Source: Sphyrna mokarran
Lineage: Eukaryota
Length of the DNA stretch: 52,025 bases
Reading direction: 5' to 3'
NCBI GenBank assembly: GCA_024679065.1
Contig: JAGIQG010000016.1
Location: 5,467,976-5,520,000, forward strand
In this document: one piece after another, positions 1,356 to 22,229 of the stretch
Layout of the letters: each line of letters begins with the position of its first letter
Numbering within the stretch: the first letter of the stretch is position 1
The notes under the pieces: generated by a model
What the model saw: the letters and a program-made list of their open reading frames with translations, nothing else
What the model was told of the DNA's origin: nothing
Database searches by the model: none
Translations under genes and position numbers: made by a program

Positions 1356-1394
1356 CCTTTGTTGCTGTTATTTTTAACATGCTGTCACTTTTAA

Positions 1395-3089: not shown

Positions 3090-3430
3090 TTTCAATTAAT
3101 TCCTTGGACATGGGTATCGCGGGCTGGGCCAGCATTTATTGCCCATCCCTAGGTGCCCTTGTGGGCAGTTGAGAATCAATCACATTGCTCTGGAGTCACA
3201 TGTAGGCCAGACCGGGTAAAGATGACAGATTTCCTTCCCGAAAGGATATTAGTGAACCAGATGGCTATTTCTGACAATGGTTTCACTGTCATCAGTAGAT
3301 TCTTAATTCCTGATATTAATTTAGTGAATTCAAATTACACCGTCTGCCATGGTGGGATTTGAACGCGGGTCTCCAGAACATCAGATGAGTTTCTGGAATA
3401 ATAATCCAGTGATAATATTACAAGGCCATT
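3090..3430 (-). mobile_element. Second tRNA-SINE family (core ggaaggaaatctg..cctacatgtgactccag; Meta/SlmI-like, name uncertain); other copies ~13800-14220, 18625-18970, 24660-24800 (minus) and 34510-35010 (plus)
   Basis: The recurrent core and tail gggcaataaatgctggcccagcc are shared with LINE ends at 10370-10570, 41215-41560 and 50045-50330. Confidence 0.7.
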
Positions 3431-3564
3431 ATCACCCCACCTCCCCGCCCTGATGTTGGTTCCAATGCGGCTGAATATTGGGCCCAGCAGGCAACAGGCA
3501 ACCCAGGGGTCTCTGCATGATTAAGTCTGGCCCCAGTGACCAGTACTGACACTGTTTACAGGTT

Positions 3565-3916
3565 NNNNNNNNNNNNNNNNNNNNNNNNNNNNNNNNNNNN
3601 NNNNNNNNNNNNNNNNNNNNNNNNNNNNNNNNNNNNNNNNNNNNNNNNNNNNNNNNNNNNNNNNNNNNNNNNNNNNNNNNNNNNNNNNNNNNNNNNNNNN
3701 NNNNNNNNNNNNNNNNNNNNNNNNNNNNNNNNNNNNNNNNNNNNNNNNNNNNNNNNNNNNNNNNNNNNNNNNNNNNNNNNNNNNNNNNNNNNNNNNNNNN
3801 NNNNNNNNNNNNNNNNNNNNNNNNNNNNNNNNNNNNNNNNNNNNNNNNNNNNNNNNNNNNNNNNNNNNNNNNNNNNNNNNNNNNNNNNNNNNNNNNNNNN
3901 NNNNNNNNNNNNNNNN
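3565..3916. other. Assembly gap (may hide the leader exon of receptor A)
   Basis: Run of N. Confidence 1.
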
Positions 3917-4062: not shown

Positions 4063-4404
4063 TTACAGCCGGGAACCAGGTTACAGGTCTGACCCTCACT
4101 GCGTTTGCTGGGGCGGAGGTGACACTCCTATGTCAGGCAACAGGAAAGAACAACACAAGATTGGTACAAATTGCCTGGAAGAAAGATGCTGAAAATATTT
4201 CCTTCATTAGATATCACCATAAGTTTGGGATCAACAATTCAAATCCACATTATTCCAGTCGGACAGTTTTCAGGAACAATTCCCAATTGGATGGATCCAT
4301 TTTATTAAAGTCTTTGCAGATGCAGGATGAGGGAATGTATAAGTGCGAGCTCACTTTATTCCCTGAGGGAAATCATGAAAAAACAATGAATTTGACAATT
4401 GTAG
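4063..4404 (+). CDS. Receptor A exon: V-set Ig domain (nectin-type)
   Basis: Acceptor ctaac...tgtttgtgcag| (alternative in-phase AG at 4067-4068), donor gtag|gtatgt. Encodes EVTLLC...VQIAW...YHHKFG...DGSILLKSLQMQDEGMYKCELTLFPEG...NLTIV, which has the Ig V C/W/DxGxYxC pattern and nectin-like xFPxG. Confidence 0.93.
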
Positions 4405-7400
4405 GTATGTATTTTCCCAGGAGCGTTGTTGCTGTGTGTGGGGGGTTTAAGTGTAATAAAAGAGGGCAGGAAACGGGGACAATGTATTGGACTGTGCGTC
4501 CTGGTGAAAACCTAATGGTTGATATTTTATGCCTGAGGTTTCGCTCGCCCAAGGCCAACAGGGAATGCTGCCCTGCCAGCCTGGCCTGCCCCAGAATAGG
4601 GTGGGCAAGGCAGCAAAATTCCGGCAATTATCTCTGCAATCATCATCGGAATATTGCTGCGTCGTTCTAATGTTTGAATCTGGTTCACATTCCGGCTCAT
4701 CTTGTTATTTTCGGGTTATTAATGGTAAGTGCTTGCTGAGCAGTTGGGAATGGGAGTTGAGAGGGTTATTTTAAAATGGATTGCATCATATTTTGTTCCT
4801 GTAGCAGGAACCCTGTGGTGGACTGTTCTGAGCAATAAATCTCTGGCAATCTCTAACTAACAGAGAGGTGAGGGAAATCCGCAGAGCTGGAGAATTTTGG
4901 GAGACTCCTCGGCACTTAGTCCATGTTACTTTCCAAATCGCTTCACTCGCTCTGTCAAAGGTCTTCCCCTGTCTTCTTCAAACTAATGCAGCTCTGTGAC
5001 ACTCAATCCATCCCTAATTCATTTGTTTCCATAGCCCTGCCTTGCCTTAGATTCATTACTCTGGATTCATTACAGTCCTTTAGCCTGTAGATCATCCTAG
5101 TGTCCTGGTCTGATGTGTGATAGAATCCCTATGGGCAGAAGGAGGCCATTCGTCCCATCGAGTCTGCACCGACAACAATCCCACCCCAGGCCCTATCCCC
5201 ACAAACCGAAGGGCCTGTTTCCCGTGCTGTTTTGTTCTTTGTTCTAAACCCGCACGTTTATCTCACTGATCCTTCTAAATACACAACTCAGGAGACTAAA
5301 GGGCAATTTGGCGTGGTCAATCCATCTGACCTGCACATCTTTGGATTGTGGGAGGAAACCGGAGCAACTGGAAGATACACATCCAGACACGGGGAGAATG
5401 TGCAGACTCCGCACTGACAGTGACCCAAGCCAACAATCGAATCAGTGTCCCTGGTGCTAGGAGATGGCAGTGCTAATCACTGTGCCATTGTGCTGCCCAT
5501 GTCACCTGCCCCTTGCCCACAGCATGGCACCAAAGTTTTTATTTCAGACTAGGACCCAGATCACACCTCCCAGTGTCACAGGCCCACACTACATGTCCCT
5601 TTGCTGCTAACTAGATTAAGTTTCCAACATCGAGACATCTCAGTCTAGACTCTGAAATCGAAATACCATTGCTGCACAGCTCCCTCCCAACACCTATCGA
5701 TGGTTTCAGAAACCCAGCCACACTTTTAATCCACCTCTAGAAACCACGTTGCTCCGAATATTTTCCTCGGTCCTGAAGCACACTCTCCATAGGAAGCATT
5801 CTGCCCAGCAATGGCAAAGCTTGTACGGCTCCTGTTCAGCCCACAGCAAAGGGTCATGGACGAAGCCCAGTCCATCGGGCAAACCGGCCTCCCACCCGTT
5901 GACTCCGTCCACACTTCCCGCAGCCTCGGAAAAGCAGCCAGTATAACCAAAGACCCCTTGCACCCCGAACATACTCTCTTCCGTCGGGAAAAAGGTGCAA
6001 AATCAGAGAAACCCTACAGTGCAGAAGGAGGCCCTTTGGCCCGTTATTGTCTGGCGGTCCAGTTAAGGTAAATGCATGAGGTCATGGGAATAGGGCCTGG
6101 GTGGGGTTGTGGTCGGTGCAGACTCAATGGGCTGAATGGCTTCATTCTGTATTGTAGGGATTCTATGAATGACTGCCATTGCTGGTCAGCCAACGTTTCT
6201 GATTCTCTCCTTTCCCAGTCCATTCCAGTCAGCTCTGTCCACCTTTCTTTGTAATTACACTTCCTGAAGTTTGGCATAGTTGTTTTTGCCCCAAGATCTT
6301 CATCCTCAAACTGAATTCTTCCACGTTATGGTCACTCTTTCCTCTGGGACCCTTTACTCTGAGACTGTTAATGAAACCAGCCTCATTGCACATTACCAGA
6401 TCCCAAACCACCCCTGGGGGTTGCATCCAACACATAAGTGTACTAGGAAACTGTCCCCAATACATTAGCCAGAATTCTCCAGCTGTTCATGTTGATGGGA
6501 TTTTCCAGTCCTGCTGGCAGCACACACACCCCACCCGGTGATTTCCTGTTGGCGTGGGATGATATTAATGTGAATTCCCATTGATGATAGAGAATCCTAC
6601 CGTTAACAAACAACACGGTACCTCCCAGTGGCGGGAAACATGTAGCTCAGAAGCCAGAGAGTCTCTCCTTTTGCATATTTTCTTCCCCACGGCTGCCTCT
6701 GCCAATTAGAGTTTTGCAATTCCCATGAAAATTAAAGTCAGCCACGATTAATGTACATATTTTTTCCATGCCCTCGTTATCTCCTGATTTATTCTCTGCC
6801 CTACCATATTCACTACTATTAGGGGACCTTGTAGACTACTCCCCCCAGCATCTTCTTCCCCTTGTTACTTCTTACCTCCACCCATTCTACACCTTCCAAA
6901 ACCAAGATCCTTTCTTGCTCTCGTACTTACTCCATCTGATACTAACAAAGTGATCCCATTGCTCTTTCCTTCCTGCCTATCATTATGGAGTGTCTTCTAT
7001 CACATTGCTCCCAGCTTTCTCTCCTTGTAACCATGTCTCTATAATGACTCTAAGATCATACCCGTCTCCCTCAATTTCAGTGTTAATTAAGTTAATTTGT
7101 GCTGAAAAATGCCCATATTTATCAAAAGAGCCACTAACTCACGTTTCTGCTCCAGACTAGTTACAAACTGCCGATATGTTTGAAACTGACTTTGAATCCT
7201 CAGGGAGCTGCAGAGACTGGGTCATTGAGTGTGTTCAAGGGTACGATTGACAGATTTTAATCAGTAAGGGTAAAGGATGTTTCCAAATCGAAAACAATCA
7301 CATTACTTATTATATTCCTTCTTATTTCTTAGGTTTTCCAATGTCTTCTTCCTTCTCTTCTCATTTTCCCACTTTGTCTCTCTCTCTTCCGATAACCTAT

Positions 7401-10400
7401 CCACCACACCATTGGGTTATTTGACATTGGGGACATTGATATATTGATCTGTTTCATGTCTCTGTTTTATATTAATGACAAGATTATTGAAACTGGCACT
7501 GAATCGATTTCTTGTTAATCTCCCCCAAGTAAAGCCCAACAACACGGCGGTGACAATTCCCACAACAGTTGGCCTTTCAGAAGTACCTGTGGCAAAATGT
7601 GTTTCAGCTGAAGGGAACCCTCCAGCCGGGATCAGGTGGATTTCCAATCTCCGTGGAAACTATACAACAACGCAGGTTAAAAGCGACAGTGGAACAACAA
7701 CTGTCACCAGCCTGTATAAGATGGTACCCACTCGTTCCACTAATGGTCAAGAAGTGACTTGTGTTGTCTCCCATCCAGCATCGCGTGGCAACATTATATT
7801 CACAAGGAAACTATCCATCCTCTGTAAGTCCCCTGTACAAATATATTTTGTAAAAATATGCAAAATGAAAAAGAGTGGCAAAAGTAAACATTTGTCCTTT
7901 GGAGGACGAGAAGGAGGATGTAATAACTGGAAATGGGAAAATGGCTGAGGCATTAAACAGGTATTTTGTGCCAGTCTTCACAGTGGAAGAGACAAATAAC
8001 ATGCCAAAAATTGATAACAAGAAGGCCATGGCAGGTAAAAACTATCATTATCCCAAAAGAGGTAGTGTTGGGCAAGCTAATGGGGCTAAAGATAGACAAA
8101 GTCTCCTGGTCCAGATGGAAGGCAACCCAGGGTACTAAAAGAGATGGTGGGGGACATAGCAAATGCACTGGTGATAATTTACTGAAATTCGCTGGACTCT
8201 GGTGTGCTTTCCATAGATTGGAAAACAGTAAATCTGACGCCTCCATTTAAAAAAGGAGATAGACAAAAGGCAGGTAACTATAGACTGGTTAGCTTAACTT
8301 CTGTAGTGGGGAAAATGCTTGAATCTATCATCAAGGAGCAAATAGCAAGACATCTGGATATAAATTGTCCCATTGGTAAGATGCAGCATAGATTCAGAAA
8401 GGACAGGTTATGTTTGACTAATTTGGCGGAATGCTTTGAGAACATTACATGTGCAAAGGACAATGGGGAACCTGTGGATGTGGTGTATCTGGATTTGCAG
8501 AAAGCATTTGACAAGGTGCTGTACCAAAGGCTGGTACCTAAGATAAAAGTGTATTGTGTTTCGGGTAATAGCATGGTTAGAAGATTGGTTAACTAACAGA
8601 AAGCAAAGAGTGGGAGTAAATGGGTGTTTTTCTGGTTGTTGATCAGTGACTAGTGATGTGCCTCAGGGATCAGTATTGGGACTGCAGTTTTTTACGATTT
8701 ACGCAGATGATTTGGAGTTGAGGACCAAGCGTAGTGTGTCAAAATTCACAGATAACACTAAGATGAGAGGCAGAGCAAAGTGTGCAGAGGACGATGAAAG
8801 GGATAAAGATAGATTAAGCGAGTGGGCAAGGGTCTGGCAGATGGAGTACAATGTTGGTAAATGTAAGGTCATTCCTTTTGGTAGGAATAACAGCAAAATG
8901 GACTATTATTTAAATGGTAAAAAATCGCAGCATGCTGCTGTGCAGAGGGACCTGGGTGTCCTAATGCAAGAATCTCAAGGAGTTGGTTTGCAGGCGTAGC
9001 AGGTAATTAAGAAGGCAAATGGAATTTTTTCCTTCATTGCTAGAGGGATGGAGTTTAAAAACAGCGAGGTTAGGTTTAGCTGTATAAGGTGCTGCTGAGG
9101 CCACACCTGGAGAACTGTGTACAGTTTTGGTCTCCTTATTTGAGAAAGCATATACTGGCACTGGAGGGGGCGCAGAGGAGATTTAATGGGTTGATTCCAG
9201 AGTTGAGAGGGTTGGCTTATGAGGAGAGACCGAGTAGGTTGGGCTATACTCATTGTAATTTAGACAAATGAGGGGAGATTCTATAAAAATGTAGAAGATT
9301 ATGAAGGGAATAGTTAAGATAGAAACTGGGAAGTTGTTTCCACTGACAGGTAAAACTAGAACTAGCGGACATGGCATCAAAATAAAGGGGAGCAGATTTA
9401 GGACTGAGTTGAGGAGGAACTTCTTCACACAAAGGGTTGTGAATCTGTGGAATTCCCTGCCCAGTTGAGGCGGCCTCATTGAATGTTTTTAAGGCAAAGA
9501 TAGATACATTCTTGAACAGTAAAAGAATTAAGGGTTATGGTGAGCGGGCGGGTAAGTGGAGCTGAGTTCACAAAACGATCAGCCATGATCTTATTGAATG
9601 GCGGGGCAGGTTCAAGGGTCAAATAGTCAAATAGTTCTAATCCAATTAGAGATATACGATAGCAAACTCTTGCTCAATTGGAGTAGGATTAAATTTATCT
9701 CACTGAGTTTCTGGGTATCTGCAATGACAGAGTTTCTGGGAGGTTTGGAACAAGTTTGATTTCACCACGCATCTATCTGCAAACCCCAACTGAATATATT
9801 AAATATGTCAAAGACTAACATATTGTTCCAGAGCACATTGTCTGGTCAACATGCCGTTACTAAATCACTCTTTTTCAGAAATTCGCGGTTATTCTAGTTT
9901 TGGCCAATTTGGTCCCACAATTTGGTGCACAATTGCTACATCAATGCAGCTGGTTGTTGTAGTGCAGATTGGACATTATCCAAGAATCGTAGAATCCGTA
10001 CAGCCCAGAAAGTGGCCATTCTGTCCATCGAACTGCGCTGAGAATGATCCCACCAAGGCCCCATCCCCTCAACCCTATATATTTACCCTGCTATTCTCCC
10101 TGATACTGAGGCCAGAATTTTACTAGCATGCCAGCCCCGATTTGGGGGCTCAGAGACCAGCCATTCTCTCTTGCCCTCGGCAGGGATTGTACGAACCTTG
10201 GGCAGACGTGCTGGTAAAATCCCTCCCAGAGTGTCAATATAGCACGGGCCAATCCACCGAACCGGCACATCCTGGGAGTGTGGGAAGAAAATGGAGCACT
10301 GGGAGGGAGGGGGGAGGTGGGGGATGTTGGTGCGTGAGACTTCAGTTGTCAGAACAAGTTTTTAAAAATGTATTTATGAAATGTGGGCGGATCACCCATC

Positions 10401-13400
10401 CTAATTACCCCTTGAGAAGATGGCAGTGAGCTGCCTTCTTGAACTGCTGAAGTCTCTGAGGTATTGGTACACCCACAGTGCTATTGAGGACGGAGATTTT
10501 GACCCAGCAACAGTGAAGGGATATATTTACCAGTCAGGATGAGAAGTTACTTGGAGGGGAGCCTCCAGTTTTTTTAAGTACTCCAGCCTTTTAAGAAGGC
10601 ATATGGAGTCTTAGCTTTTATTGGTAGGGGGATTGAATTTCGGAGCCGCAACGTCATGTTGCAACTGTACAAAACTCTCGTGCGGCCGCACTTGGAGTAT
10701 TGTGTGCAGTTCTGGTCCCCACATTATAAGAAAGATGTGGAGGCATTGGAGAGGGTACAGAGGAGGTTTACCAGGATGTTGCCTGGTATGGAGGGCAGGT
10801 CTTATGAAGAGAGGCTGAGGGATTTGAGGTTGTTTTCGTTAGAAAGGAGGCGGCTAAGAGGAGACCTTATTGAAACATATAAGATGATTAGAGGTTTAGA
10901 TAGGGTGGACAGTGATAGCCTTTTTCCTAGGATGGAGAAAGCTAGCACGAGGGGACACAGCTTTAAATTAAGGGGTGATAGTTATAGGACGGATATCAGA
11001 GGTAGGTTCTTTACCCAAAGGGTGGTTCGGGAGTGGAATGCCCTGCCTGCAGCAGTTGTAGATGCGCCAAGTTTGGTGGCGTTTAAGAGGTTAGTTGATA
11101 AGTATATGGAAGAGAAGGGAATGGTTTAGTTTGGAGGGGCATTGCTTTTTATATTGGTCGGCGCAACATCAAAGGCCGAAGGGCCTGTTCTGTGCTGTAA
11201 TGTTCTATGTTCTATGTTCTAGTTGGTGTTCTTTCCCAAATTTCTGCTGCCCACTCCCCCCAATGCGGTAATCACACATTCCAGGGGATGTGTTAAACTA
11301 TACATGCTTTCTAGAATCAGACAAACCCTATAGGAGGTCATTCAGCCCATCGAACCTGCACGGGTCACAATCGCATGCAGACCCAATCCCCCGTCACCTC
11401 ACGTGTTTGCCCTGTTAATCCCCCCTGACACCGGGGGACAACTCAGCATGGCCAATCCACCTAATCCGTGCATCCTTGAAGTGTGAGAGGGAACTGGAGC
11501 ATCCAGGGTAAACCCACGCAGACACGGGGAGAACGTGTAAACTCCACACAAACTGTGCAGGGTTATTTACTGGCGTCACAAATGGGCTTATGTTAACATC
11601 GCAAAGGAGTCACCGTGAAAATCCCCGACTCTGCCGCCTGCTTGGGTACGCTGAGGGAGAGTTTAGCATGTCCAATACACCTAGCCAGCACGTCTTTCGG
11701 ATTGTGGGAGGAATCCGGGGTACCCGGAGGAAACCCACACAGACACGGGGAGAATGTGCGAACTCCACACAGAGAGTGACCCGAGAGCAGAATCGAACCT
11801 GGGTCCCTGGCACTGTGAGGCGGCCGTACTAACCCCTGCACCACCATGCCATCTTCTGAGTTCTCCCACATGCTTGTGGTTCATTCAACTTCGAAAGAAA
11901 TCACTTTTTGATATTTTAAGATTGCATAGTTCATCCGGGTGCTCCAGTTTCCTCCCACAGTGCAAAGATGTGCAAGTAAGAAGGATTGGTTAAATTGCCC
12001 CTTAGTGGGACGAGTGGAGTAAATCTGTGGAGTTATGGGGATAAGCCCTGTGTGTGATTGTTGTCAGTGCAAGCTCGATGGGACGAATGGCTTCCTCCTG
12101 CACTGTATGATTCTGCGTTTCTATTGTTAGTTGAGTTTCCTGTTGCTGTGACCACTTTGACACAAATACAACATTGCATTCTTTACTATATGGAGCACTG
12201 ACCACATGAACACAATGATTTCCCCCATAGATCCACCGATAGTGACCATAACACATGAACATGGCAGCAGGAGTATCAACCTCAAATGTGTCGCGGAAGC
12301 CAATCCTCCAGCAACAACCTATTCTTGGCAAGGGTAAATATGTGCTGAATTTATTGAGAATTTCATTGTGTACACTTCCTACCCTGTGGAGATAATGGAT
12401 GGTTCAGAATTGTGATGAGCCTATACACTGCGAAAACAGGTCTATCCCGGCAACTTCTCTCTACGTGTCGTTGTTTCCAGGGCAACATTGTTAAAAATGT
12501 GTTAGGCACACGCGGGAGGCGGAGCTGAATCTTGACTGGGTTGTATGTTCAATGAGAAACCGTGAACTGAGAATCTGGATCCCATGACCAGGTGGATATA
12601 GAGAAGAGTGAGGTCATTTCCTAAACTCATCATCATCTCGGAGCTGCACCTTCAACTCCAGAAACGCCAACTAGATTAAGCGAAAAAACAAATGTAAATA
12701 GAAGTTTGGGTCTCATTATGTGGGCTGTTTGAAAAAAAATGCAACAATCTGAGGTGCCACTTTCAGCCCAGTGAAATGTCACAACCACAAAACACAACCA
12801 AACTCAAAAATAAATTCTTATCTCAGGGTTTATCTGTCCTTTGGCCCCTTAACCGCTTGGTGAGCAGAACCAACATGAATTATTGCTGGTCTAAATGAAC
12901 CATCCCCTCTCCCTCTCACCACAGGGCCATCTGTCACTTTTAGCTTTACTTTCAACAAGCACTGGCCTCTTGTCACATGTTCTGCTATCTTTGTCACTAC
13001 TCACACCTTCTTTAGTCCTTCATGGCACCATTAACACCCACTTTGCCTTGTGCCCATTACATCTTTCAGTAACTCCAACCTATCCCGATTCTGGGGCACA
13101 TTCTCTCACAGTATAATCCAGCACCCCTCGTCAGCTCAGAGGAGACTCACAGAGTCGCGAGATGTTAACTCTGCTTCTCTCTCCACAGACGCTGCTGAGT
13201 TTATCCAGCATTTTCTGTTCTTTATATGAAGAACCAGCATTAAGAATGAATGTGTTCTGCAGGTCAAGGCAGCGGAGAAGGAGAAGGGGAGGATATCCTT
13301 TTGTGTGAGATTGGCATGCCGGCAATACTTCTGAATAAGATGATAGGGTAAACTAATGTGTATTGGAGTTTAATATCGGTCTAAATGTGCCCACGATACA

Positions 13401-16400
13401 AGTGTATCGCTCACTGGGTGGGATTAGGCTGATGTACAACAGATGTTACAGAGAAGCGCAGAGAAATTGTGACAAATAGCAGTTAGGATGGTTTGTTGTG
13501 TGAGATTCTGCGTCAGAAATCTTTGGGACAGATTTCCCTTTTGGGCGATAAGGGGAAACAGGTAATAGAAAATTGGTCTCCCATTGCGTCTTTGCTCATT
13601 GTCACATTCCCCCCAGCAGGGTCATCAACATTGCCTTCCTCCTTCTCTGGGTTTCTACAATCCTCTGACAATCCAATTTCAATAACATTCCCCTGTTCAA
13701 TCCTCCCTCTTTCTCTTTACCCTCACTCCCTCCATCAATTGTTGCCATGGCAACACTCTCAGATCTTCATTTCCAAACTCTACATTTAGTTGTCATGTTT
13801 TTCCTACGTGGGATACGGGCTGGGACAGCATTTAGCCCTCGTTGCCCTAGGTGCAGTTGAGAGTTAACCACATTGCAGTGGCTCTGGACCCACGTGAAGG
13901 TGAGAGGAGGTGAGGACAGCAGATTTCCTTCCCCAGTCAATCAGATGGGTTTTTTTTGACAATCAGCAAAGAGTAGATTCTTAATACCAGATCCTTAAAA
14001 CATTCAAACTCCACCACAGGCTGGAACTGAGGCAAGGGGAGTAAAATTCACCCACACCTGAAAATGACTTGCTTCACAGACTTGCCCCCAAACTTTTAGC
14101 TGGAAAAAGTAAACTTTTGGCAAACTTTATTCCAGCGGTGGGATTCGAACCCAAGGTCCCCAGAACGTTCATTGAGTTTCTGGATTAATTACCCAGCGAC
14201 AATATCACTGGGCCATCGCCTCCTCCGATTTCTGTTCAATTTTTTGAAAACCCTTTTGACTCCTCAACCCTACTCTTGATCTGACCCCCTTGTTTGTCTC
14301 TTTGTCATTCCGACTAATTTGAGGCATCCTCCACTGAAAGCTCATTTCAAAAGCTGTTCTTCACCCAACTTCACCCTTTGGAATCTGATTCTCAGCTCCG
14401 TGGAGTGCAACAATGTACTCCGATGATTGATTTAGACATGTCATTACCCTTATGCTGGTGCTGTTGGACTTACAGAGGTAACTCAGCTCACCTGGGTCAT
14501 TCCTCTGACCTTACCCCAATTGTTTTCATTTGACTTGATTTATTATTGTCACATGTATTGCGATACGGTAAGGAATATTGTTTCTTGGATGCTGTACAGA
14601 CAAAGCATAGCATTCAGAGAGAAGGAAAAGAAAGTAAAGAATGTAGAACTACTGTCACAGGTAAAGAAAGGTCAACTGAGTGCAAGCTAAGACATTCAAA
14701 AGTTTGATGGCAGCAGGGAAGAAGGTGGTCGATACGTGACTTCAGGCTTTTGTATACTTTTCCCAATGGAAAAAGGTGGGAGAAGGAATGCTCGGGGTGC
14801 GTGGGGTCCTTAATTATGCTGGCTGCTTTGCCGAGACAGCGGGAAGTGTAGACAGAGCCATTAGATGGGAGGCTGGCTTGAGTGATGGACTGGGCTTTGT
14901 TCAAGACCCTTTGTAGTTTCTTGCTATCTTGGGCAGAGCAGGAGCCCATACCAAGCTGTGATCCAAGCAGGAAGAATGCTTTCTGTGGTGTATCTGTAAA
15001 AATTGGTGAGAGTCACAGCTGATATGCCAAAGTTCCTTGGTCTTCTGACAAAGTAGCGGCATTGGTGGGCTTTCTTAACCATAGTGTCAGCATGGGGGAA
15101 CCAGAAAAGGTTGTTGGTGATCTGGACAGCATTGTGATTGTGGATGGAAGCTTGATCATTGACACAACACACATGGATTGTTCCTATCTCACTGCTTCCG
15201 ATCCTGATTATTCCATCACCATTTAAACCCAGAACATTTGTCCTTAACTCATTAACATCAATCTGCATCACTTATGCCCCATTATACACCCTTCCTGATG
15301 TCCCTTACCCATCCAGCCAGTGGTAGATACAAGCTGGAGGGGTGCAGAATGGGTTGGCTGCTCCATCTGGAGTTAACATTAATCGCCCAGATTTGGTCAC
15401 CAGGACATTTCTTCAATGCGCATTGTTGGTTTTTCCAAGGTTACCAGAAGAAGTGGAGACAAACACAAGCCAAGCATTCGTAAAGATCAGGATGAAAGGA
15501 AATGTGAGCTGTTTTGCCACCAACTCAATCGGGACAGGGAATAACACAATTGAGATAATATTTGAAGGCTCCAGTGAAGGTATTTATTAACGAATTGTAA
15601 TAGAAAGTGACTAATTCCTTTCATTTTGTTTATGGACGGACTGGTCATAGAGGCTATTCTACAACAAGATATCAGATTAGGTGATTGGAATGATGAGCTC
15701 ACTTTGAGATTGTGAGAGGCACTATAAAAATGCAATTTATTATTTCAGTGATGATTGATTCACAGTACAGACGGAGGCCATTTGGCCCATTGAGCCTGCA
15801 CAGACAGCAATCCCACCCAAGTCTAATCCCCGTAACCCCACATATTTAAATTCCTCGCTCCCCTAACACTAATGTGCGTTTATCAAGGTAAAAAGTCTCA
15901 CAACACCAGGTTAAAGTCCAACCAGTTTATTTGGTGGTGAACCCACAAACTTTCGGAAACACTGCTGCTTCGTCAAGCGTGTGGAAGGTCCACGCACTTC
16001 AGAACCTTCCACACACCGGATGAAGGGACAGTGATTCCGAAAGCTTGTGGGCTTATTATCAAATAAAATGGTTGGACTTGAACCCAGTGTTGTGAGACTT
16101 CTTACTGTGTTTACCCCAGTCCAATGCTGGCATCTTCACGTCACGGCTACCGATTTATCGCGGCCAGTCAACCTACCCTGCACATCTTCGGACCGCCGGA
16201 AGAAAACCACGCAGGAGCAAGGAGAAGATGCAAACTCCAGCTGAGGCTGGAATCAAAAACCTGGGAGCTGTGAGGCAGTAGTGCCAACCACTGTGCCATC
16301 CCGTGGTATATCGGACACCTCCCCGGGCCAGCAAAATGAGGTGTGCCCCCGTCACTGGGTAAAAACCCAGCCAACGAAAGGAAGGGGGTTGACATGAAAC

Positions 16401-19400
16401 ACAGCGGGGATTTATTGGATATCTCTATAGTGTTAATTATTTGTATGTTCACCTTATGCTACTGACATAGGACGCGAAATCATCATCCTCAGTGTGGTAG
16501 TGGCGGTGTTGCTGGTTATTCTTGCCACGATTCTCATCGTCTTCCTCATCAGGAGAAAACGTAAAGCAGTAGGTAAGTTCTCAGGGAATGAAAGGTGAAA
16601 TTAGACACCTGCACAGGTATCTCACCTGGACACAGGTATTCAATACTTCCGCCGTATCATCTTCCAACCTTCTGAGGTTACTGTCCACTCTGATCTCAAT
16701 TTTCTCCCAAAGAGTTGTTCCCTTTCATCATCTCCAATCCTGGGAATAGTCCATTGTCCAAGAATTTACGGAAGAACATAAGGACTAGGAGCAGAAGTAG
16801 GCCTCTGGCCCCCTCGAGCCTGCCCCGCCATTCAATAAGACCATGGCTGGTCTTTTTGTGGACTCGGCTCCACTTACCCGCCTGCTCACCATAACCCTTC
16901 ATTCCTTGACTTGTTCAAAAATGTATCTACCCTTGCCTTAAAAACATTCAAAGAGGTAGCCCCGACTGGGCAGAGAATTCCACAGATTCACAACCCTTTG
17001 CGTGAAGAAATTCGTCCTCAACTCAGTCCAAAATCTGCTCCCCTTTATTTTGTGGCCAATGCCCCCTAATTCGAGTTTCACCCACCAGTGGAAACAACTT
17101 CCCTGCTTCTATCTTGTCTATTCCCTTCATAATCTTATGTATTTCTATAAGGTCCTCAGGTTCTATCCCCATACCCCCATGCATTTACTCCAGCTAGCAC
17201 TCTTGACACTAAGGGATAATTTAGCATGGCAAATCCACCCAACCCACACATCTTTGGACTATGGGACGAGCACCCAGAGGAAACCCCCCTTAGACATGGT
17301 GAGAAGGTGCAAACTGCACACGCACGGTGACCCAAGCCAGGCATTGAACCCGGCTCCCTGGCACTGTGAGACATCCGTGCTAACCAACTGTGCCACTCAT
17401 CTTATGTGCCTTTACATCTCCCACTTCTACCTTTCACCAAATTCCTTTTCATCCTGTAATCTCTCAAATCACTTTAAGATTGTTGCATCCGCTGGCTACA
17501 TGTCCCTAAGTTCTGACGAAAGCAGTATCACCTGAAACATTTACTCCGTTTCTCTCTCCATCTCAGCTACCTGGTCTGTTGAGAATTCCTGGCATTTTCA
17601 GTTTATTAATTTCAGATTTCTGCCATTCCTGTGCTCTCCGTTAGAATCGGGGAGCTGGTTTACACCAGTGTCTTCCTTCAGCAAGGAGAGAAGCAAACTC
17701 GAATATATAATGACACAAATCTCCCATTTCATTCATTCAACAGGATCCTACGTCAACAGTTCATTCCTAAGGAAGAGAATCGAGCAGGTAATTGAACGCG
17801 CTGTGATTATTTGCATCATTTCAGCTTCCTACCAAACATTTCAGCCACACAATTGCGGGTCTGCGCCAAGTTGCACCCAAGAGATAGAAATTGCTGTTAG
17901 GGTTTAACTTCATCTGCTTCACGCTTTGGTGACAATGTTCATCAAGTTAGTGGTGTGGAAATCTGCAAAGATACTCTCCAATATCTCTGGGATATCGTTC
18001 TACCAAAAACTATTGATCCATCGGAGAAGGGCAAAGCTTTTCACCAAATATCATCAATACGAATTTAAGATCATTTGTCACAGATTCCCAGGGAATATTT
18101 TTTGCGTGTCACATTGTTTAGAGCTGGAAGTGTTCGCTGGAAAGGCGCTGGAAGCAAATTCCTGAGTAAATAAGAAGCATTGAAATGATCACTAGAAACA
18201 CGAAAGAATCCAAGCCTAGGGACCGAGAGCTATCACGTGTTGTGAGAATTGATTGATGTTCAATGATTACAGACCAACATGGGATGGGAATGGATAAGTG
18301 CTTGACGGGTGGCAGAGATACGATGGGCCGAAAGGCCTCTTTCATTGCTGTGAAGAACCATACCTGTGACCAATAGTTCAGAAGGAAGAGTGAGCAGAGT
18401 TATTTAGAAATAGCAGGGCAGTGAAACTAATTGGGGAGCTCTATCAAAGATCCTACAATCATGAGTTGCAGAATATACTTCAGAACAGCATGACTTTGTG
18501 ATTCTATGAATTATTCCCATTTACTGTTTGCCGTGCAGAGAAGCTGTGATCTCTTGGTTCATTGATTACACTGAGTTTCCCCCTCTTTCCCCCAGTTTAC
18601 ATCCACGCCTTGTGCCTTCTTGTTTACTCATTCATGGGACACGGGCATCACTGGCTGGGCACCATTTATTGCCCATCCCTAGTTGCCCCAGGGCAGTTGT
18701 GAGTCAACTACATTGCTGTCAATCTGGAGTCACACGTAGGACAGGCCTGATAAGAATAGTTGATTCACTTCCCTGGAGGACATTAGTGAACCAGATGGGA
18801 TTTTCCAGCAATCGGCAATGACTTCATGGTCATCAATAGATTCTTAATTCCAGATATTTTTTATTGAATTCAAATTACACCATCTGCTGTGGTGGGATTC
18901 GAACGTGACCCCAGAACGTTAGCTGAGTTTCTGGATTAATAGTCGAGCAATAATAACCATGAGTCCATCGCCTTGCCTTTCCCTTCCTGTCCAAGATAAC
19001 TTCTGACTGTCCTACCTTGAACTGTATCCAATTTCTGTTCCAGGATTCACCCGAGATGCCTGAAACATACATGGTAAGTGAAACATGGATATATTTTAAA
19101 TGAAACTTTATTTTGTTGAATCAACATGACTGGTTTACTAAAAATTACATGTGTGACACTTTCCCACAGAGTCTGAATTTAGGGGAACAATCGCTATACA
19201 GTGAATTACACAGGTACACCTCGTTCTATATCAATTCTCAGCCAATCCAGCCTCATCAGGTATATTTGTTTTCTTTCTGTCTCGGCACCTGTCTCGCTGT
19301 CTGTCTGTCAGTTTATCACTCTGACCTTCTGTTAGACTGTCTGTGACACAGTCAGTCAGTCCATCTGTCAATCAGTCTGTCAATAGTCTGTCTGCCTGTG

Positions 19401-20581
19401 TGGCTGTCTGTCAGACTGTCAGTTTCTCTGTCAGTCTGTCTATCTGTCAGCGTATCAGTCTGTCTATCTGTCTGTCTGTATGGCTGCCTGTCAGACTGTC
19501 TGCTTCTCTGTTAGTCTGTCTATCTGTCAGCGTATCAGTCTGTCAGTCAGTCTGCCTGTATGACTGTCTGTCAGACTGTCTGCTTCTCTGTTAGTCTGTC
19601 TATCTGTCAGCGTATCAGTCTGTCAGTCAGTCTGCCTGTATGACTGTCTGTCAGACTGTCTATTTCTCTGTCAGTCTGTCTATCTGCCAGCGTATCAGTC
19701 TGTCTGCCTGTATGGCTGTCTGTCAGACTGTCTGCTTCTCTGTTAGTCTGTCTATCTGTCAGCGTATCAGTCTGTCAGCCAGTCTGCCTGTACGACTGTC
19801 AGTCAGACTGTCTGCTTCTCTGTCAGCCTGTCTATCTGTCAGCGTATCAGTCTGTCAATCAGTCTGCCTGTCTTGGCAGTCTTATTGCCCAAGTCTCTGT
19901 CAGTAAAACTGACTGCCAGTCTGACAGTCTGTAAATGTATCAGCCTGTCTGTCAGTCTGACTGTGGGTGGCATGGTGACCCAGTGATTAGCATTGCTGCC
20001 TCACAGCGCCAGAGACCTGGTTTCAATTCCCGGCTTGGGTCACTGTCTGGATGAAGTCTGCACATTCTCCTCGTGTCTGCGTGGGTTTCCTCCAGGAGCT
20101 CCGGTTTCCTCCCACAGTCCAAAGATGTGCGGGTTAGGATGATTGGCAATGCTAAAGTGGCCCTTAGTGTCAGGGAGACTAACTCGGTTAATTGGGTTAT
20201 AGGGATAGGACCTGGATGGGATTGTGGATATTGCAGATTCAATGAACCAAATGGCCTCCTTCTGCACTGTAGGGTTCTATGATTCTATAATTCTAATCTG
20301 TCTGTTAACTAACCAGTTTATTTACACCAGTCAGTCTGTCATTCTGACCGCCAGTCTGCCTGTCAATACGAATGTCAGTCAGTAAGATATCTACCTGTCT
20401 CTATAACTAAGTCTCTCTAACATTCTCCTTCTCCTGAGGTTTTCCATTATCAATAAATATTAGACTCTTCTCTTTTACTTTATAAATACTGCTCCCAGAC
20501 ATCTAACATTCATTTATTTTTTTCAGACAAGGTGAACGCAGCACAAGAAAAAACACCGTTCATCCAGACCTGGGACAGTGA
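4063..20581 (+). CDS. Nectin/PVR(CD155)-like type I Ig receptor with cytoplasmic ITAM (receptor A); join(4063-4404,7530-7823,12231-12333,15440-15579,16471-16572,17744-17787,19044-19073,19170-19213,20527-20581), 5'-partial
   Basis: Nine exons with AG/GT ends and consistent phases (1,1,1,2,1,1,0,0,2) give about 384 aa without the leader: V-set, two C-type Ig domains, hydrophobic TM, RRKRK stop-transfer, and tail GSYVNSSFLRKRIEQ-DSPEMPETYM-SLNLGEQSLYSELHR-QGERSTRKNTVHPDLGQ*. The signal-peptide exon was not found (gap 3565-3916 or upstream). The last exon is less certain. Confidence 0.88.
5120..5500 (-). mobile_element. HE1-like V-SINE
   Basis: Reverse-complement V core and tRNA-like head. Confidence 0.82.
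5785..5995 (+). mobile_element. Rex1/Babar-like LINE fragment
   Basis: AQSIGQTGLPPVDSVHTSRSLGKAASITKDPLHP. Confidence 0.7.
6170..7050 (-). mobile_element. Degenerate CR1 endonuclease-region fragments
   Basis: ORF 6229-6465 contains DLVMCNEAGFINSLRVKGPRGKSDHNVEEF (APE-type SDH motif). Confidence 0.6.
7530..7823 (+). CDS. Receptor A exon: second Ig domain (nectin D2, C1/C2-set)
   Basis: Acceptor tcccccaag|, donor ctct|gtaagt, phase 1-1. Encodes VKPNN...VPVAKCVSAEGNPPAGIRW...GTTTVTSLYKMVPTRSTNGQEVTCVVSHP, typical of nectin D2 (AxCxSxxGxPPAxIxW, GTxTVxS, TCxVxH). Confidence 0.95.
7845..9620 (+). mobile_element. CR1-clade LINE ORF2 (RT) fragment, frameshifted, starting ~20 nt after the D2 exon donor
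   Basis: GNYRLVSLTSVVGKMLE, VDVVYLDLQKAFDKV, VPQGSVLG and RPHLENCVQFWSP across ORFs 8204-9271, followed by a CR1 tail. Confidence 0.95.
10595..11220 (+). mobile_element. CR1-clade LINE 3' end (young, intact C-terminal ORF)
   Basis: ORF 10656-11129 LYKTLVRPHLEYCVQFWSP...FFTQRVV, with a (gttctat)n tail. Confidence 0.93.
11310..12110. mobile_element. Cluster of three V-SINE pieces (two minus, one plus)
   Basis: V cores at ~11490-11550 and ~11700-11850 (minus) and ~11930-12110 (plus). Confidence 0.75.
12231..12333 (+). CDS. Receptor A exon: third Ig domain, N-terminal half
   Basis: Acceptor tttcccccatag|, donor gg|gtaaat. Encodes YPPIVTITHEHGSRSINLKCVAEANPPATTYSWQ (YPP...LxCxAxANPP..Y.W). Not in the ORF track. 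Confidence 0.92.
14530..15125 (-). mobile_element. Rex1/Babar-like LINE 3' fragment
   Basis: KKAHQCRYFVRR...LTNFYRYTTESILPAWITAWYG and KKLQRVL..AQSIT...ASIIKDPTHP..F.LFP.G, with an (aaatc)-type tail. Confidence 0.8.
15440..15579 (+). CDS. Receptor A exon: third Ig domain, C-terminal half
   Basis: Acceptor ggtttttccaag|, donor gaag|gtattt, phase 2-1. Encodes (G)LPEEVETNTSQAFVKIRMKGNVSCFATNSIGTGNNTIEIIFEGSSE (CxAxNxxG motif). Confidence 0.9.
15888..16150. mobile_element. Palindromic element made of two inverted Penelope-like 3' ends
   Basis: agtctcacaacaccaggttaaagtccaac...gttggacttgaacccagtgttgtgagact forms long inverted arms, each with a degenerate ctgatga..gaaa motif. Confidence 0.7.
16471..16572 (+). 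CDS. Receptor A exon: transmembrane segment
   Basis: Acceptor ctgacatag|, donor gtag|gtaagt. Encodes (G)REIIILSVVVAVLLVILATILIVFLIRRKRKAV. Confidence 0.93.
16775..17150 (-). mobile_element. CR1 LINE 3' end
   Basis: Reverse-complement match to the 3' region at 9290-9620. Confidence 0.85.
17165..17400 (-). mobile_element. HE1-like V-SINE
   Basis: gtgctaaccaactgtgccac head end and V core. Confidence 0.78.
17744..17787 (+). CDS. Receptor A cytoplasmic exon 1 (44 nt, YVN motif)
   Basis: ttcattcaacag| GSYVNSSFLRKRIEQ |gtaatt. Same length, phase and GSYVN start as the paralog exon at 47628-47671. Confidence 0.88.
19044..19073 (+). CDS. Receptor A cytoplasmic exon 2 (30 nt, first ITAM tyrosine)
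   Basis: tttctgttccag| DSPEMPETYM |gtaagt, phase 0-0. Confidence 0.9.
19170..19213 (+). CDS. Receptor A cytoplasmic exon 3 (44 nt, rest of ITAM)
   Basis: ctttcccacag| SLNLGEQSLYSELH(R) |gtacac, after a 96-nt intron. The paralog exon reads SLNLNEQSMYRQLH(R). Confidence 0.88.
19300..19960. repeat. GTCT/CTGT-derived minisatellite with ~80-bp higher-order unit
   Basis: Near-identical units start at ~19484, 19564 and 19644. Confidence 0.9.
19965..20290 (+). mobile_element. HE1-like V-SINE, full length
   Basis: A-box/B-box-like head, V core, tail ctgcactgtagggttctatgattcta. Confidence 0.88.
20527..20581 (+). CDS. Receptor A probable terminal coding exon
   Basis: Branch-like ctaac plus T-tract tttcag|. 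In phase 2 it reads (R)QGERSTRKNTVHPDLGQ*. AATAAA at 21543-21548 is a candidate poly(A) signal. Confidence 0.55.
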
Positions 20582-22229
20582 TCCATTCTCCTCTTGGTTC
20601 CAGCCCGTCAATATTACTGTATAAAGTCCCCTGAAGGTGCAAGGCTACAACACGGGGGTCAGGGACAGTTGCCACACCTCGAGCTTTGCTTACTGAGTGC
20701 TGCAGTAAATCTCTGTGCTGATAATCCAGATTGCCATCTGTCTAATGGGATCGCTCTGATACTTGCAACCGTATGTCGCTGTTTCTATTACCCGCATTTA
20801 CCAGTCAGAATCCACTGAGATTTCACGTATGGGTATTTAAAACTGGAAGTGCTGGATACTCTCAGCAGGTCTGGCAGCATTGCTGGAGAGAGAAACAGTT
20901 CACCTTTCGAGGCTCCTTCCTTACTATAATAATATATTTGTCGATGACACCTATTTAATTTCCATTCACCTATTTGCTTTCAATTCATTTTTAATTTTTA
21001 ATGTAATATCTCCCATCCCAGCCACATTCCCGCCAGCCCCCATTCATATCCTTGTTCGTAATTTAGCAGCAATATTTGAGTCACCGAGCAGGATGGATTG
21101 GAACAGTTTGTTTTATGATTATCGGAGCTGTTCTGCCTGCATGCAGCAGCGCTGTGTTGTTACTGCAGCAGTATAATTGACCCCGATTGCTGCAATGTTT
21201 GGTTTAATCTTCACAGTGATATTTTCAGCTGATTTGGAGGAGGCAGAAATGTTGCCTTGCATCCCCAATCCCCATTCATCTCCTGCCTGTGATTTTCCAA
21301 TGTTATTTTAATCAGGGCATAATAGCTTTGGATTGTGGACAACACCCCCCATTATCCGATGGGAGTTTTCCAATGGAGACCTTGTTCTCCGAAGACCCAT
21401 TCCCATATTGTCAGAAGGGTGTGCCACTCTTGTGTGACTGCAGTGACGGTGGGGGGGGGGGAGTTCTTTACATTGAAACCAATGATTCTCAGTGGAATCG
21501 CTTTAGTTTATTATTGCAATAACAGCAGTGGTGTATCATCTCAATAAATAACTCATTCGTGTTGAGTTATATTGACATCTTTTTGAGTAGCCAATTAATC
21601 ATTTCTAACATTGAAGATAGGAGCAGTTGTATCTAATTTGATGGGCCGAATGGCCTCCTTCTACACTGTAAGGTCTCTGTGAATTATTTGAAGTTCTAGT
21701 CCAAAAGCTTTATGGAGGTTGTAAGGTTTCCAGCCTCCCCTACCTTCCCAGGCAGTACATTCCAGATTCCCGCCACCCTCTGGAATATTTTCCTCAAGTC
21801 TCCTCTGAACCATTTGCCCCTTACCTTAAGACTATGGCTCCCCGTGATTAACCCCCCAACCGAGGGGAACCCTATTCAACTTTGTCCTCATAAACTTAGA
21901 CACCTCAATTATGTCCCCCACCCTCACAATTCTATGCGTAAAGGAGAGAATCTATGCCTATTCAGTGTGAGGCAATGAATTTCCAGCTACCAGCATCCTG
22001 CACCCATCTCCCCTCTACTCTTGCTTCAATTATCTACCCCCCCCCCACACTCTGCCACCCTCACATAATACATATATACATCCATATACCTCTATCTATT
22101 ATATACATCTATCAGTAGCTTCCGCATCCCTCCCTCCCCTGCCGCTCACAACCTCTTTTGCTCTTGATCGATTTCACGACCTTATCCAAAAGAAATATTT
22201 CCCTGTCAAAGTTTCACAATTCAACTCAA

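What the first reader, a model, noticed from the sequence alone, without database searches (positions are those of the whole stretch)
4063..20581. Nectin/PVR-like receptor with its own ITAM: candidate activating immune receptor family in cartilaginous fish
Seen: the exons splice in phase into a V-C-C nectin-type ectodomain, an uncharged TM, and a tail made of 44-, 30- and 44-nt micro-exons. The tail reads DSPEMPETYMSL-NLGEQSL-YSEL, i.e. acidic residues then YxxL-x7-YxxL. Established: this is the ITAM consensus that binds Syk/ZAP-70 tandem SH2 domains. Classical nectins end in an afadin-binding E/AxYV motif (absent here), CD155/TIGIT/CD96 carry ITIM-type motifs, and CD226 uses an ITT-like YVN motif. 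I know of no mammalian nectin-family member with an intrinsic ITAM. Inference: an adhesion-type ectodomain wired directly to Syk, possibly a phagocytic/decoy pathogen receptor (analogous to CEACAM3) or an NK/myeloid activating receptor. Annotation could easily label it nectin-like and drop the micro-exons.
Basis: partly seen in the sequence, partly recalled or inferred. Interest (0 to 1): 0.92.

Follow-up and report, generated by a model that had tools for sequence, protein, structure and literature searches.

The report
Shark nectin-like receptor with built-in ITAM
This shark gene joins a nectin/poliovirus-receptor-type outer part to its own activating signalling motif (ITAM), and in other sharks it has a near-identical twin with an inhibitory tail, so it looks like an undescribed family of paired immune receptors.

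Summary
Nine exons on the + strand (4063-20581) have AG/GT borders and compatible phases. They encode V, C2-set and split Ig domains, an uncharged transmembrane segment, and 44/30/44-nt tail exons carrying YxN and YxxL-x7-YxxL.

The ectodomain is nectin/PVR-type. No RNA run was listed, so support for the splicing is comparative:
- The exon peptides map in order and without gaps onto automated "nectin-1-like" models from seven other shark species that carry the same tail.
- A second, diverged tail cassette with the same exon sizes lies on the minus strand.

ITAM tyrosines are invariant: the first in 10 of 10 tails, the second in 9 of 9.

New here: three species have a same-species twin whose ectodomain is 92.7-96.0% identical but whose tail is ITIM+ITSM, only 26-30% identical. 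That is a paired activating/inhibitory family. The ITAM is split in its first tyrosine module, as in classical ITAM genes (PMC4536121).

Signalling through Syk/ZAP-70 is inferred, not shown. The leader exon was not found. Eight library searches found no description of the family. The scan had already noted the minus-strand copy and neighbouring nectin-like genes on this genome.

The parts
4063..4404 (+). Gene A, V-set Ig exon (342 nt, phase 1-1)
   Evidence: Splice sites read and translation. Pfam V-set 1.8e-13. Best solved match is nectin-1 D1 at 2.6e-15. 76% identical to Mustelus asterias 'nectin-1-like' P0180.
7530..7823 (+). Gene A, second Ig exon, C2-set (294 nt, phase 1-1)
   Evidence: Pfam C2-set_2 2.1e-20. 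Best solved match is PVR D2 at 3.9e-16.
12231..12333 (+). Gene A, first half of the third Ig domain (103 nt, phase 1-2)
   Evidence: Pfam Ig_3 9.5e-4, below the cut-off. Maps to residues 229-266 of P0173.
15440..15579 (+). Gene A, second half of the third Ig domain plus stalk (140 nt, phase 2-1)
   Evidence: Maps to residues 268-316 of P0173. No Pfam hit on its own.
16471..16572 (+). Gene A, transmembrane exon with a basic stop-transfer stretch (102 nt, phase 1-1)
   Evidence: No charged residue in the hydrophobic core. 25 of 33 residues identical to Mustelus P0004.
17744..17787 (+). Gene A, tail exon 1 (44 nt, phase 1-0) with the YVN motif
   Evidence: Maps to residues 356-369 of P0173, directly before tail exon 2. 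YxN is present in 9 of 10 tails.
19044..19073 (+). Gene A, tail exon 2 (30 nt, phase 0-0), ending with the first ITAM tyrosine plus one residue
   Evidence: Maps to residues 370-379 of P0173. The tyrosine is invariant in 10 of 10 tails.
19170..19213 (+). Gene A, tail exon 3 (44 nt, phase 0-2): rest of the first YxxL, spacer, second YxxL
   Evidence: tblastn of relatives' tails hits this place at E 7.5e-8 to 7e-3. The second tyrosine is invariant in 9 of 9 tails.
20527..20581 (+). Gene A, proposed last coding exon with stop TGA at 20579-20581 (uncertain)
   Evidence: A good acceptor and an in-phase reading frame, but no similarity to the relatives' C-termini. Most relatives stop one residue after the ITAM.
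51682..51804 (-). Gene B, transmembrane exon (123 nt, phase 1-1). Its ectodomain exons would lie beyond the window end.
   Evidence: The only strongly hydrophobic stretch on the minus strand above 47672. AG/GT borders read.
47628..47671 (-). Gene B, tail exon 1 (44 nt) with YVN
   Evidence: Same length and phase as in gene A. Aligned to gene A.
45948..45977 (-). Gene B, tail exon 2 (30 nt), ending in Y plus one residue
   Evidence: Aligned to gene A.
45803..45846 (-). Gene B, tail exon 3 (44 nt) completing YxxL-x7-YxxL. The donor reads GC, not GT.
   Evidence: tblastn E 3.3e-4 to gene A's exon. Sequence read. Aligned.

Best explanation
Gene A encodes a type I membrane receptor of a shark-wide family. 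It has a nectin/PVR-type ectodomain of three Ig domains, an uncharged transmembrane helix, and a short cytoplasmic tail. The tail carries a membrane-proximal YxN motif and one classical ITAM. The receptor therefore needs no charged-helix adaptor such as DAP12 or FcR-gamma.

Proposed mechanism (inferred):
1. The V domain binds a cell-surface ligand, most likely another nectin/PVR-type molecule, or a pathogen protein that targets the inhibitory twin.
2. Binding clusters the receptor.
3. Src-family kinases phosphorylate both ITAM tyrosines.
4. A Syk/ZAP-70-type kinase docks through its tandem SH2 domains and activates the cell. The phosphorylated YxN can add a Grb2-type input.

The gene is the activating member of a paired system. 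In other sharks, a same-species twin has an almost identical ectodomain and an ITIM+ITSM tail. The ectodomain exons are kept alike within each species, most simply by gene conversion or repeated recent duplication. The two tail types stay distinct and old.

Shown: the gene structure, the family, the motif conservation, the twin pattern and the split-ITAM exon structure. Inferred: expression, ligand, phosphorylation, kinase recruitment and cell type.
For: Gene structure. Nine exons with AG/GT borders and compatible phases.

Ectodomain. Pfam V-set 1.8e-13 and C2-set_2 2.1e-20. Nectin-1 and PVR are the best solved relatives. The relative P0173 matches nectin-1 at 4.6e-59, PVR at 1.4e-51, nectin-3 at 1.7e-50 and nectin-2 at 1.2e-42.

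Same tail in protein models of 7 other shark species: Stegostoma, Chiloscyllium, Hemiscyllium, Cetorhinus, Carcharodon, Pristiophorus and Scyliorhinus torazame. These span Galeomorphii and Squalomorphii.

Mapping. The window's exon peptides map in order onto these models. The three tail exons abut without gaps, for example at residues 356-369, 370-379 and 380-392 of P0173.

Conservation in register:
- First tyrosine, 10 of 10.
- Its +3 position, L in 8 of 9 and V in 1 of 9.
- Second tyrosine, 9 of 9.
- Its +3 position, L in 7 of 9 and I in 2 of 9.
- YxN, 9 of 10.

Second copy. Gene B on the minus strand has a diverged tail cassette that keeps the 44/30/44-nt exon sizes, the phases and both YxxL.

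Paired pattern.
- Same-species activating versus inhibitory ectodomains are 96.0, 92.7 and 93.8% identical. Their cytoplasmic parts are 26.1, 29.6 and 29.2% identical.
- Identity drops sharply at the transmembrane exon.
- On the ectodomain tree the twins are sisters, with support 100/99, 99/97 and 100/100.
- A single clade of activating ectodomains is rejected at AU p 1.6e-36. I named that group after seeing the tree.

Exon structure. The ITAM is split in the first tyrosine module. This is what PMC4536121 (passages read) states for all classical ITAMs.
Against: - No RNA evidence. No sequencing run was listed, so none of the junctions is confirmed by reads in this species.
- The relatives are automated gene models.
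- No leader exon was found in the window.
- The Pfam ITAM model scores only 13.6 bits against a cut-off of 22.2 on the one tail tested, Pristiophorus.
- The acidic/N residue at -3 of the first tyrosine, part of the consensus quoted in PMC4536121, is absent in both window genes. Gene A has E at -2.
- One species has V at +3 of the first tyrosine, and one species lacks the YxN tyrosine.
- The distal YxxL also fits the loose ITIM pattern S-x-Y-x-x-L.
- The window itself holds no inhibitory partner. For this genome, that partner rests on an unchecked scan note.
Confidence: 0.7

Rival explanations
1. The two YxxL motifs do not work as an activating ITAM. They might act as tyrosine-based endocytosis or sorting signals. 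Alternatively, the distal S-x-Y-x-x-L might act as an ITIM-like or inhibitory-ITAM site that recruits phosphatases.
For: YxxL also fits the general YxxPhi sorting motif (my own knowledge). The distal module matches the loose ITIM pattern in 6 of the 7 complete relatives' tails; Pristiophorus instead matches it at the proximal module. The Pfam ITAM score on the one tail tested is sub-threshold.
Against: The exact 7-residue spacing, both tyrosines and both +3 aliphatic positions are kept in 9 of 9 tails. Sorting signals do not require that. The intron splits the first tyrosine module as in classical ITAMs. The family already has a separate, clearly inhibitory tail type (ITIM+ITSM) on twin ectodomains, which makes a second inhibitory tail less likely.
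Confidence: 0.12
2. Gene A is an unexpressed or decaying copy in this genome. The family is real, but this locus is not a working gene.
For: No leader exon was found in 1-3564. No RNA run was listed. The last exon has no counterpart in relatives. Multigene receptor clusters commonly hold pseudogenes (my own knowledge).
Against: All eight exons from V to tail exon 3 are open, with canonical splice sites and intact Ig cysteine pairs. The leader may simply lie in the N run 3565-3916, which sits right before the V exon.
Confidence: 0.1
3. The tail is a chance motif produced by picking convenient small ORFs, and the real transcript ends differently.
For: The exons are very short (30-44 nt), and no reads were available.
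Against: The same three tail segments occur contiguously in protein models of 7 other species. They also occur as a second cassette with identical exon sizes in the window. The window hit to the Cetorhinus tail has E 7.5e-8.
Confidence: 0.03

Closest known systems
Nectin-1 / PVR (CD155) and the other nectins
   Same: A V - C2-set - Ig ectodomain with clear sequence homology, and a single transmembrane helix.
   Different: There is no afadin-binding C-terminal motif. The predicted end of gene A and the relatives' ends show none; the motif itself is recalled. The tail is about 55 residues and built of micro-exons with YxN plus an ITAM. Twins with ITIM+ITSM tails exist.
CD226 (DNAM-1), the activating nectin-family receptor of NK and T cells
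   Same: An activating-type receptor with nectin-family V domains. It has a tail tyrosine followed by x-N, a Grb2-type site (CD226's motif is recalled, not tested).
   Different: As recalled, CD226 has two Ig domains and no ITAM. Here there are three Ig domains, or one in the Carcharodon V-only forms P0011 and P0153, plus a full ITAM. Similarity of the V exon to CD226 is weak, at 8.4e-6.
TIGIT / CD96 / PVRIG, the inhibitory nectin-family receptors
   Same: The family's inhibitory twins carry ITIM-type motifs on nectin-type V domains. This is functionally analogous.
   Different: The shark twins share one nearly identical ectodomain per species. They are not separate, anciently diverged genes. 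Homology to CD96 is distant, at 2e-7.
CEACAM3 and Fc-gamma-RIIA (IgSF receptors with an ITAM or ITAM-like motif in their own tail; CEACAM1/CEACAM3 as a pair)
   Same: An adhesion-type Ig ectodomain wired directly to an ITAM without an adaptor. There is an activating copy beside an inhibitory copy with a very similar ligand-binding part. The features of the known receptors are recalled.
   Different: A different Ig subfamily. CEACAM solved chains match the relative P0173 only at 1e-10 to 3e-7. The shark motif has the classical 7-residue spacer.
Classical ITAM signalling subunits (CD3, CD79, FcR-gamma, DAP12)
   Same: [quoted passage not shown] Gene A has a phase-0 intron after Y-x.
   Different: Those subunits have a charged transmembrane residue and little or no ligand-binding ectodomain (PMC4536121 passage). 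Here the helix is uncharged, and the ITAM sits on the ligand-binding chain itself.

Membership tests
Nectin/PVR family (ectodomain) | N-terminal V-set domain homologous to nectin/PVR D1 | tested here: met
   Pfam V-set 1.8e-13. Nectin-1 D1 2.6e-15, nectin-4 9.3e-10, nectin-3 5.2e-9 and PVR 2.9e-6.
Nectin/PVR family (ectodomain) | Second domain of CD80-like C2-set type, followed by a third Ig domain | tested here: met
   C2-set_2 2.1e-20. PVR D2 3.9e-16. The third domain is split over two exons and maps onto relatives. The relative P0173 aligns to nectin-1 over residues 29-312.
Nectins in the strict sense (nectin-1 to -4) | C-terminal afadin-binding PDZ motif (E/A-x-Y-V; recalled) | tested here: not met
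   The proposed last exon ends without it. The relatives' tails end one to a few residues after the ITAM. The locus is therefore nectin-like or PVR-like, not a nectin orthologue.
Classical ITAM | YxxL/I - 7 residues - YxxL/I | tested here: met
   Gene A and gene B both fit. 9 of 9 complete tails fit, counting one V at the first +3 position.
Classical ITAM | D/E/N at -3 of the first tyrosine (consensus as quoted in PMC4536121) | tested here: inconclusive
   N or D stands at -3 in 6 of the 7 complete relatives. It does not in S. torazame, Mustelus, gene A (E at -2) or gene B.
Classical ITAM | [quoted passage not shown] | tested here: met
   A phase-0 intron follows Y-x in gene A (19073/19170) and in gene B. 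The rule is stated in PMC4536121.
Classical ITAM | Match to the Pfam ITAM model PF02189 | tested here: inconclusive
   13.6 bits against a cut-off of 22.2, E 0.099, on the Pristiophorus tail. The window's own tail exons were too short to scan singly and were not joined.
Classical ITAM | Phosphorylation-dependent binding of Syk/ZAP-70 tandem SH2 domains | not testable with these tools
   Needs biochemistry.
Paired activating/inhibitory receptor family | Near-identical ectodomains with opposite signalling tails in one genome | tested here: met
   Met in relatives: Stegostoma 96.0%, Cetorhinus 92.7% and Pristiophorus 93.8% ectodomain identity, against 26-30% in the tail, with a step at the transmembrane exon. 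For the window's own genome the inhibitory partner lies outside the window. No such exons were found, and it is known only from scan note s1-887028.
Paired activating/inhibitory receptor family | Activating member couples through a charged transmembrane residue to an ITAM adaptor (the usual arrangement; recalled) | tested here: not met
   The helix is uncharged and the ITAM is intrinsic. This is the respect in which the family departs from KIR/LILR/SIRP-type pairs.

The most novel reading that the evidence does not exclude
Sharks run a self-contained paired receptor system built on the nectin/PVR fold. One ligand-binding ectodomain per species is kept uniform by gene conversion. It is coupled either to an intrinsic classical ITAM (plus YxN) or to ITIM+ITSM. 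On this reading the system serves as the cartilaginous-fish counterpart of KIR/Ly49/LILR-type or DNAM-1/TIGIT-type surveillance on NK-like, T or myeloid cells. The ITAM cassette would have been captured by exon shuffling from a classical ITAM subunit before the split of galeomorph and squalomorph sharks.
Probability: 0.3. Interest if true: 0.85.

Novelty: new variant of a known kind. Interest (0 to 1): 0.7.

Why it matters
Very little is known about activating and inhibitory innate lymphocyte or myeloid receptors in cartilaginous fish. A 2014 survey (PMC4016189, passages read) reported no FcR-gamma, FcRL, classical FcR or KIR/LILR-type genes in shark data.

This family offers a concrete candidate. 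Its nectin-type ectodomain comes in ITAM and ITIM+ITSM versions, is conserved across the shark orders sampled here, and has twin ectodomains that are homogenised within each species. If the ITAM works, three things follow:
- The nectin/PVR recognition axis, which in mammals feeds DNAM-1, TIGIT and CD96, was already used for balanced activation and inhibition at the base of jawed vertebrates. It did so with a different, adaptor-free wiring.
- Classical ITAM exons can move onto ligand-binding chains.
- There are defined reagents, namely ectodomain-Fc fusions and tail chimeras, for finding ligands and the cells that carry the receptors.

The result also shows that current automated annotation truncates some members by missing the 30-44-nt exons.

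Tried and rejected
- RNA evidence. The look-up of sequencing runs on 11500-21499 listed no run, so read laying could not be used.
- Tail-only homology search. Residues 353-408 of P0155 found only its own cluster among 17 candidates. This is uninformative at that database size.
- Tail against solved structures: 0 matches up to E 10.
- Leader exon. An ATG/phase-1-donor scan and tblastn of seven relatives' leaders found nothing convincing upstream of the V exon.
- Inhibitory-type tail exons in the window. The best hit was E 0.18, inside the GPCR ORF on the other strand, which I took as chance. Alternative activating/inhibitory 3' ends within gene A are therefore not supported.
- A weak minus-strand match to tail exon 1 of orectolobiform relatives at 7470-7426 (E 0.087) has no splice sites. 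I rejected it as chance.
- A transmembrane-like hit next to the N run at 48964-48920 (E 0.88) was rejected in favour of the exon at 51804-51682.
- An ITAM-like pattern in a lamprey multi-Ig protein (P0065) was not pursued.
- Literature. Searches found no paper describing nectin-like receptors with an ITAM in sharks or fish. I saw listings and abstract starts only, except for passages of PMC11507803, PMC13262535, PMC4016189 and PMC4536121. Subscription journals and supplementary files were not searchable, so an earlier description cannot be excluded.
- Rows left out of the tree: the V-only or partial models P0011, P0004, P0181, P0179 and P0027, the near-duplicate P0164, the isoforms P0033, P0154 and P0156, and the first half of the fused model P0007.
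This call repeats it with that field added.


Full report
**What is in the sequence**

On the + strand, nine open segments between 4063 and 20581 have AG acceptors and GT donors, and their phases fit each other:
- V exon, 4063-4404, phase 1-1.
- C2-set exon, 7530-7823, phase 1-1.
- Third Ig domain in two exons, 12231-12333 (phase 1-2) and 15440-15579 (phase 2-1).
- Transmembrane exon, 16471-16572, phase 1-1.
- Three micro-exons of 44, 30 and 44 nt: 17744-17787, 19044-19073 and 19170-19213.
- A possible last exon, 20527-20581, ending in TGA.

The transmembrane core has no charged residue and is followed by a basic stretch. The first micro-exon carries Y-V-N. The second ends with a tyrosine and one more residue. 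The third supplies the rest of that YxxL, a spacer, and a second YxxL. This gives YxxL-x7-YxxL with a phase-0 intron inside the first module.

I never joined the exons for a search or a fold.

**What the ectodomain is**

- The V exon scores Pfam V-set 1.8e-13, and the second exon scores C2-set_2 2.1e-20.
- Against solved structures, the V exon is closest to nectin-1 D1 (2.6e-15). Then come nectin-4, nectin-3, JAML, CD96, nectin-2, PVR and CD226.
- The second exon is closest to PVR D2 (3.9e-16) and nectin-2.
- A full-length relative, Cetorhinus P0173, aligns over all three domains to nectin-1 (4.6e-59), PVR (1.4e-51), nectin-3 (1.7e-50) and nectin-2 (1.2e-42).

It is thus a nectin/PVR-type ectodomain without a clear one-to-one mammalian orthologue. 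The afadin-binding end of true nectins (a recalled feature) is absent from the predicted end and from the relatives.

**Is the tail real?**

The junctions are therefore supported only by comparison.

An exhaustive profile search with the V exon gave 728 proteins at E up to 0.001, of which the best 150 were listed. A word-index search was also run. The closest relatives are all shark proteins that NCBI's pipeline names "nectin-1-like", "nectin-3-like" or "tactile-like".

Seven species have models with the same tail: Stegostoma tigrinum, Chiloscyllium punctatum, Hemiscyllium ocellatum, Cetorhinus maximus, Carcharodon carcharias, Pristiophorus japonicus and Scyliorhinus torazame. The window's exon peptides map onto them in order. 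The three tail exons abut exactly, with no insertion or deletion.

In a common register of ten tails (seven species, one truncated Mustelus model, and the two window genes):
- The first tyrosine is invariant, 10 of 10.
- The second tyrosine is invariant, 9 of 9.
- The first +3 residue is L in 8 of 9 and V in 1 of 9.
- The second +3 residue is L in 7 of 9 and I in 2 of 9.
- An L-x-E-Q stretch in the spacer is invariant.
- YxN is present in 9 of 10. S. torazame lacks the tyrosine.

The species span Galeomorphii and Squalomorphii.

Within the window, a second tail cassette lies on the minus strand:
- Transmembrane exon, 51804-51682.
- Tail exons 47671-47628 (44 nt), 45977-45948 (30 nt) and 45846-45803 (44 nt).

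It has the same exon sizes and phases, YVN, and both YxxL. Otherwise its sequence is diverged, and the last donor is GC.

The closest model, Mustelus P0180 (76% identical over the V exon), stops just after the transmembrane exon. Mustelus P0004 stops at the first ITAM tyrosine.

The same searches returned a second tail type with an ITIM-type module and an ITSM-type module. It occurs in Stegostoma, Hemiscyllium, Rhincodon, Cetorhinus, Carcharodon, Pristiophorus, S. canicula, Heterodontus (two models) and Heptranchias. Two skates carry a degenerate form.

Where one species has both types:
- The ectodomains are 96.0% (Stegostoma), 92.7% (Cetorhinus) and 93.8% (Pristiophorus) identical.
- The cytoplasmic parts are 26-30% identical.
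- Activating forms of different species share only 44.5-53% in the ectodomain but 51-58% in the tail.
- Identity drops abruptly where the transmembrane exon starts. In Stegostoma the leader also differs.

On a maximum-likelihood tree of 19 ectodomains, the twins are sisters, with support 100/99, 99/97 and 100/100. The tree otherwise follows the shark orders, and the activating/inhibitory label changes 5 times. Holding all activating ectodomains together is rejected at AU p 1.6e-36. I named that group after seeing the tree.

This is the signature of paired receptors: two old tail types, and one ectodomain kept alike within each species by gene conversion or repeated duplication.

The window holds no inhibitory-type tail exons. 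Scan notes place such a gene about 75 kb upstream (s1-887028) and further nectin-like genes just before the window (s1-887447). I could not check these.

**How it most likely works**

The motif fits the classical ITAM in spacing and residues. Its gene structure matches what Guselnikov et al. state for all classical ITAMs: two exons, with the border inside the first tyrosine module (PMC4536121, passages read). That argues for a true ITAM cassette, possibly acquired by exon shuffling.

The inferred steps are:
1. Ligand-driven clustering.
2. Src-family phosphorylation of both tyrosines.
3. Docking of a Syk/ZAP-70-type kinase.
4. An added Grb2-type input from phospho-YxN.

No adaptor is needed, because the helix is uncharged. 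The inhibitory twin would counter this through SHP-type phosphatases.

Points against:
- The Pfam ITAM model is sub-threshold on the one tail tested, at 13.6 against 22.2 bits.
- The -3 acidic/N position is not kept in the window genes.
- The distal module also fits a loose ITIM pattern.
- Nothing is known about expression.

**Comparison and novelty**

The family works like CEACAM3 or Fc-gamma-RIIA, which have an intrinsic ITAM on an Ig receptor. It also works like KIR/LILR/SIRP-type pairs. It belongs by descent to the nectin/PVR group, whose mammalian immune members (CD226, TIGIT, CD96, PVRIG) use other motifs. These mammalian features are recalled.

When I ran the motif scan, 179 proteins were stored: the 150 listed representatives and the cluster members fetched by then. 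Only the shark family and one lamprey multi-Ig protein showed an ITAM-like pattern in the last 90 residues.

Eight full-text searches found no description. The library omits most subscription journals, and supplements were closed.

I rate it a new variant of a known kind. The proteins already exist as unnamed automated models, and the concept of paired receptors is old. Two things appear undescribed: a nectin-type pair with an intrinsic, classically split ITAM, and its conservation across sharks. A 2014 survey reported no FcR-gamma, FcRL or LRC-type genes in shark data (PMC4016189, passages read). This makes an adaptor-free activating receptor of added interest, though that survey is old.

**Verdict**

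- Observation: confirmed.
- Interpretation: supported at the sequence and comparative level, and extended to a paired family.
- Function: inferred.
- Weak points: the missing leader exon, the uncertain last exon and the lack of reads.

Noticed in passing
window 31199-32206 (+): An intronless 335-aa ORF lies between the two convergent receptor genes. It is a rhodopsin-family GPCR with a DRY-type motif (Pfam 7tm_1, 5.3e-20).
   Followed up: partly
window 8204-8999 and 10656-11129 (+), 38457-38849 (+), 48804-49577 (+), 29579-30013 (-), 26247-26525 (-): Several fragments of LINE-type retrotransposon ORFs lie in introns and between genes. One scores Pfam RVT_1 at 2.9e-11, and the same C-terminal peptide recurs in the others.
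   Followed up: partly
proteins P0011, P0151, P0153 (Carcharodon carcharias): Some family members are V-only: one nectin-type V domain, a transmembrane helix, and the YxN plus ITAM tail. The architecture is TIGIT- or PVRIG-like but with an activating motif. One of them is named 'tactile-like' by its source.
   Followed up: no
proteins P0156 (Stegostoma) and P0176 (Carcharodon): These isoform models lack the transmembrane exon but keep the reading frame into the tail. The transmembrane exon is phase 1-1, so skipping it is frame-neutral. They may be soluble forms or model artefacts.
   Followed up: no
window 45803 (-), donor of gene B tail exon 3: The donor dinucleotide is GC rather than GT. The frame also stays open into the intron, and the read-through resembles the C-terminal extension of the Cetorhinus model P0173.
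   Followed up: partly
window 7426-7470 (-): A weak match (E 0.087) to the YINVPN part of tail exon 1 of orectolobiform relatives lies in intron 1 of gene A on the opposite strand. No splice sites are evident, so it is probably chance.
   Followed up: partly
window 19290-19910 (+) and 50580-51140 (+): These are long low-complexity stretches, with repeated CTGTC/TCTC-type units that read as S/L/C-rich ORFs. One follows gene A's ITAM exon, and the other lies in gene B's intron.
   Followed up: no
proteins P0164/P0165 (skates): The skate relatives have the ITSM-type module, but the tyrosine of the ITIM-type module is replaced by histidine. No ITAM form from rays or chimaeras appeared in the hits.
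   Followed up: no
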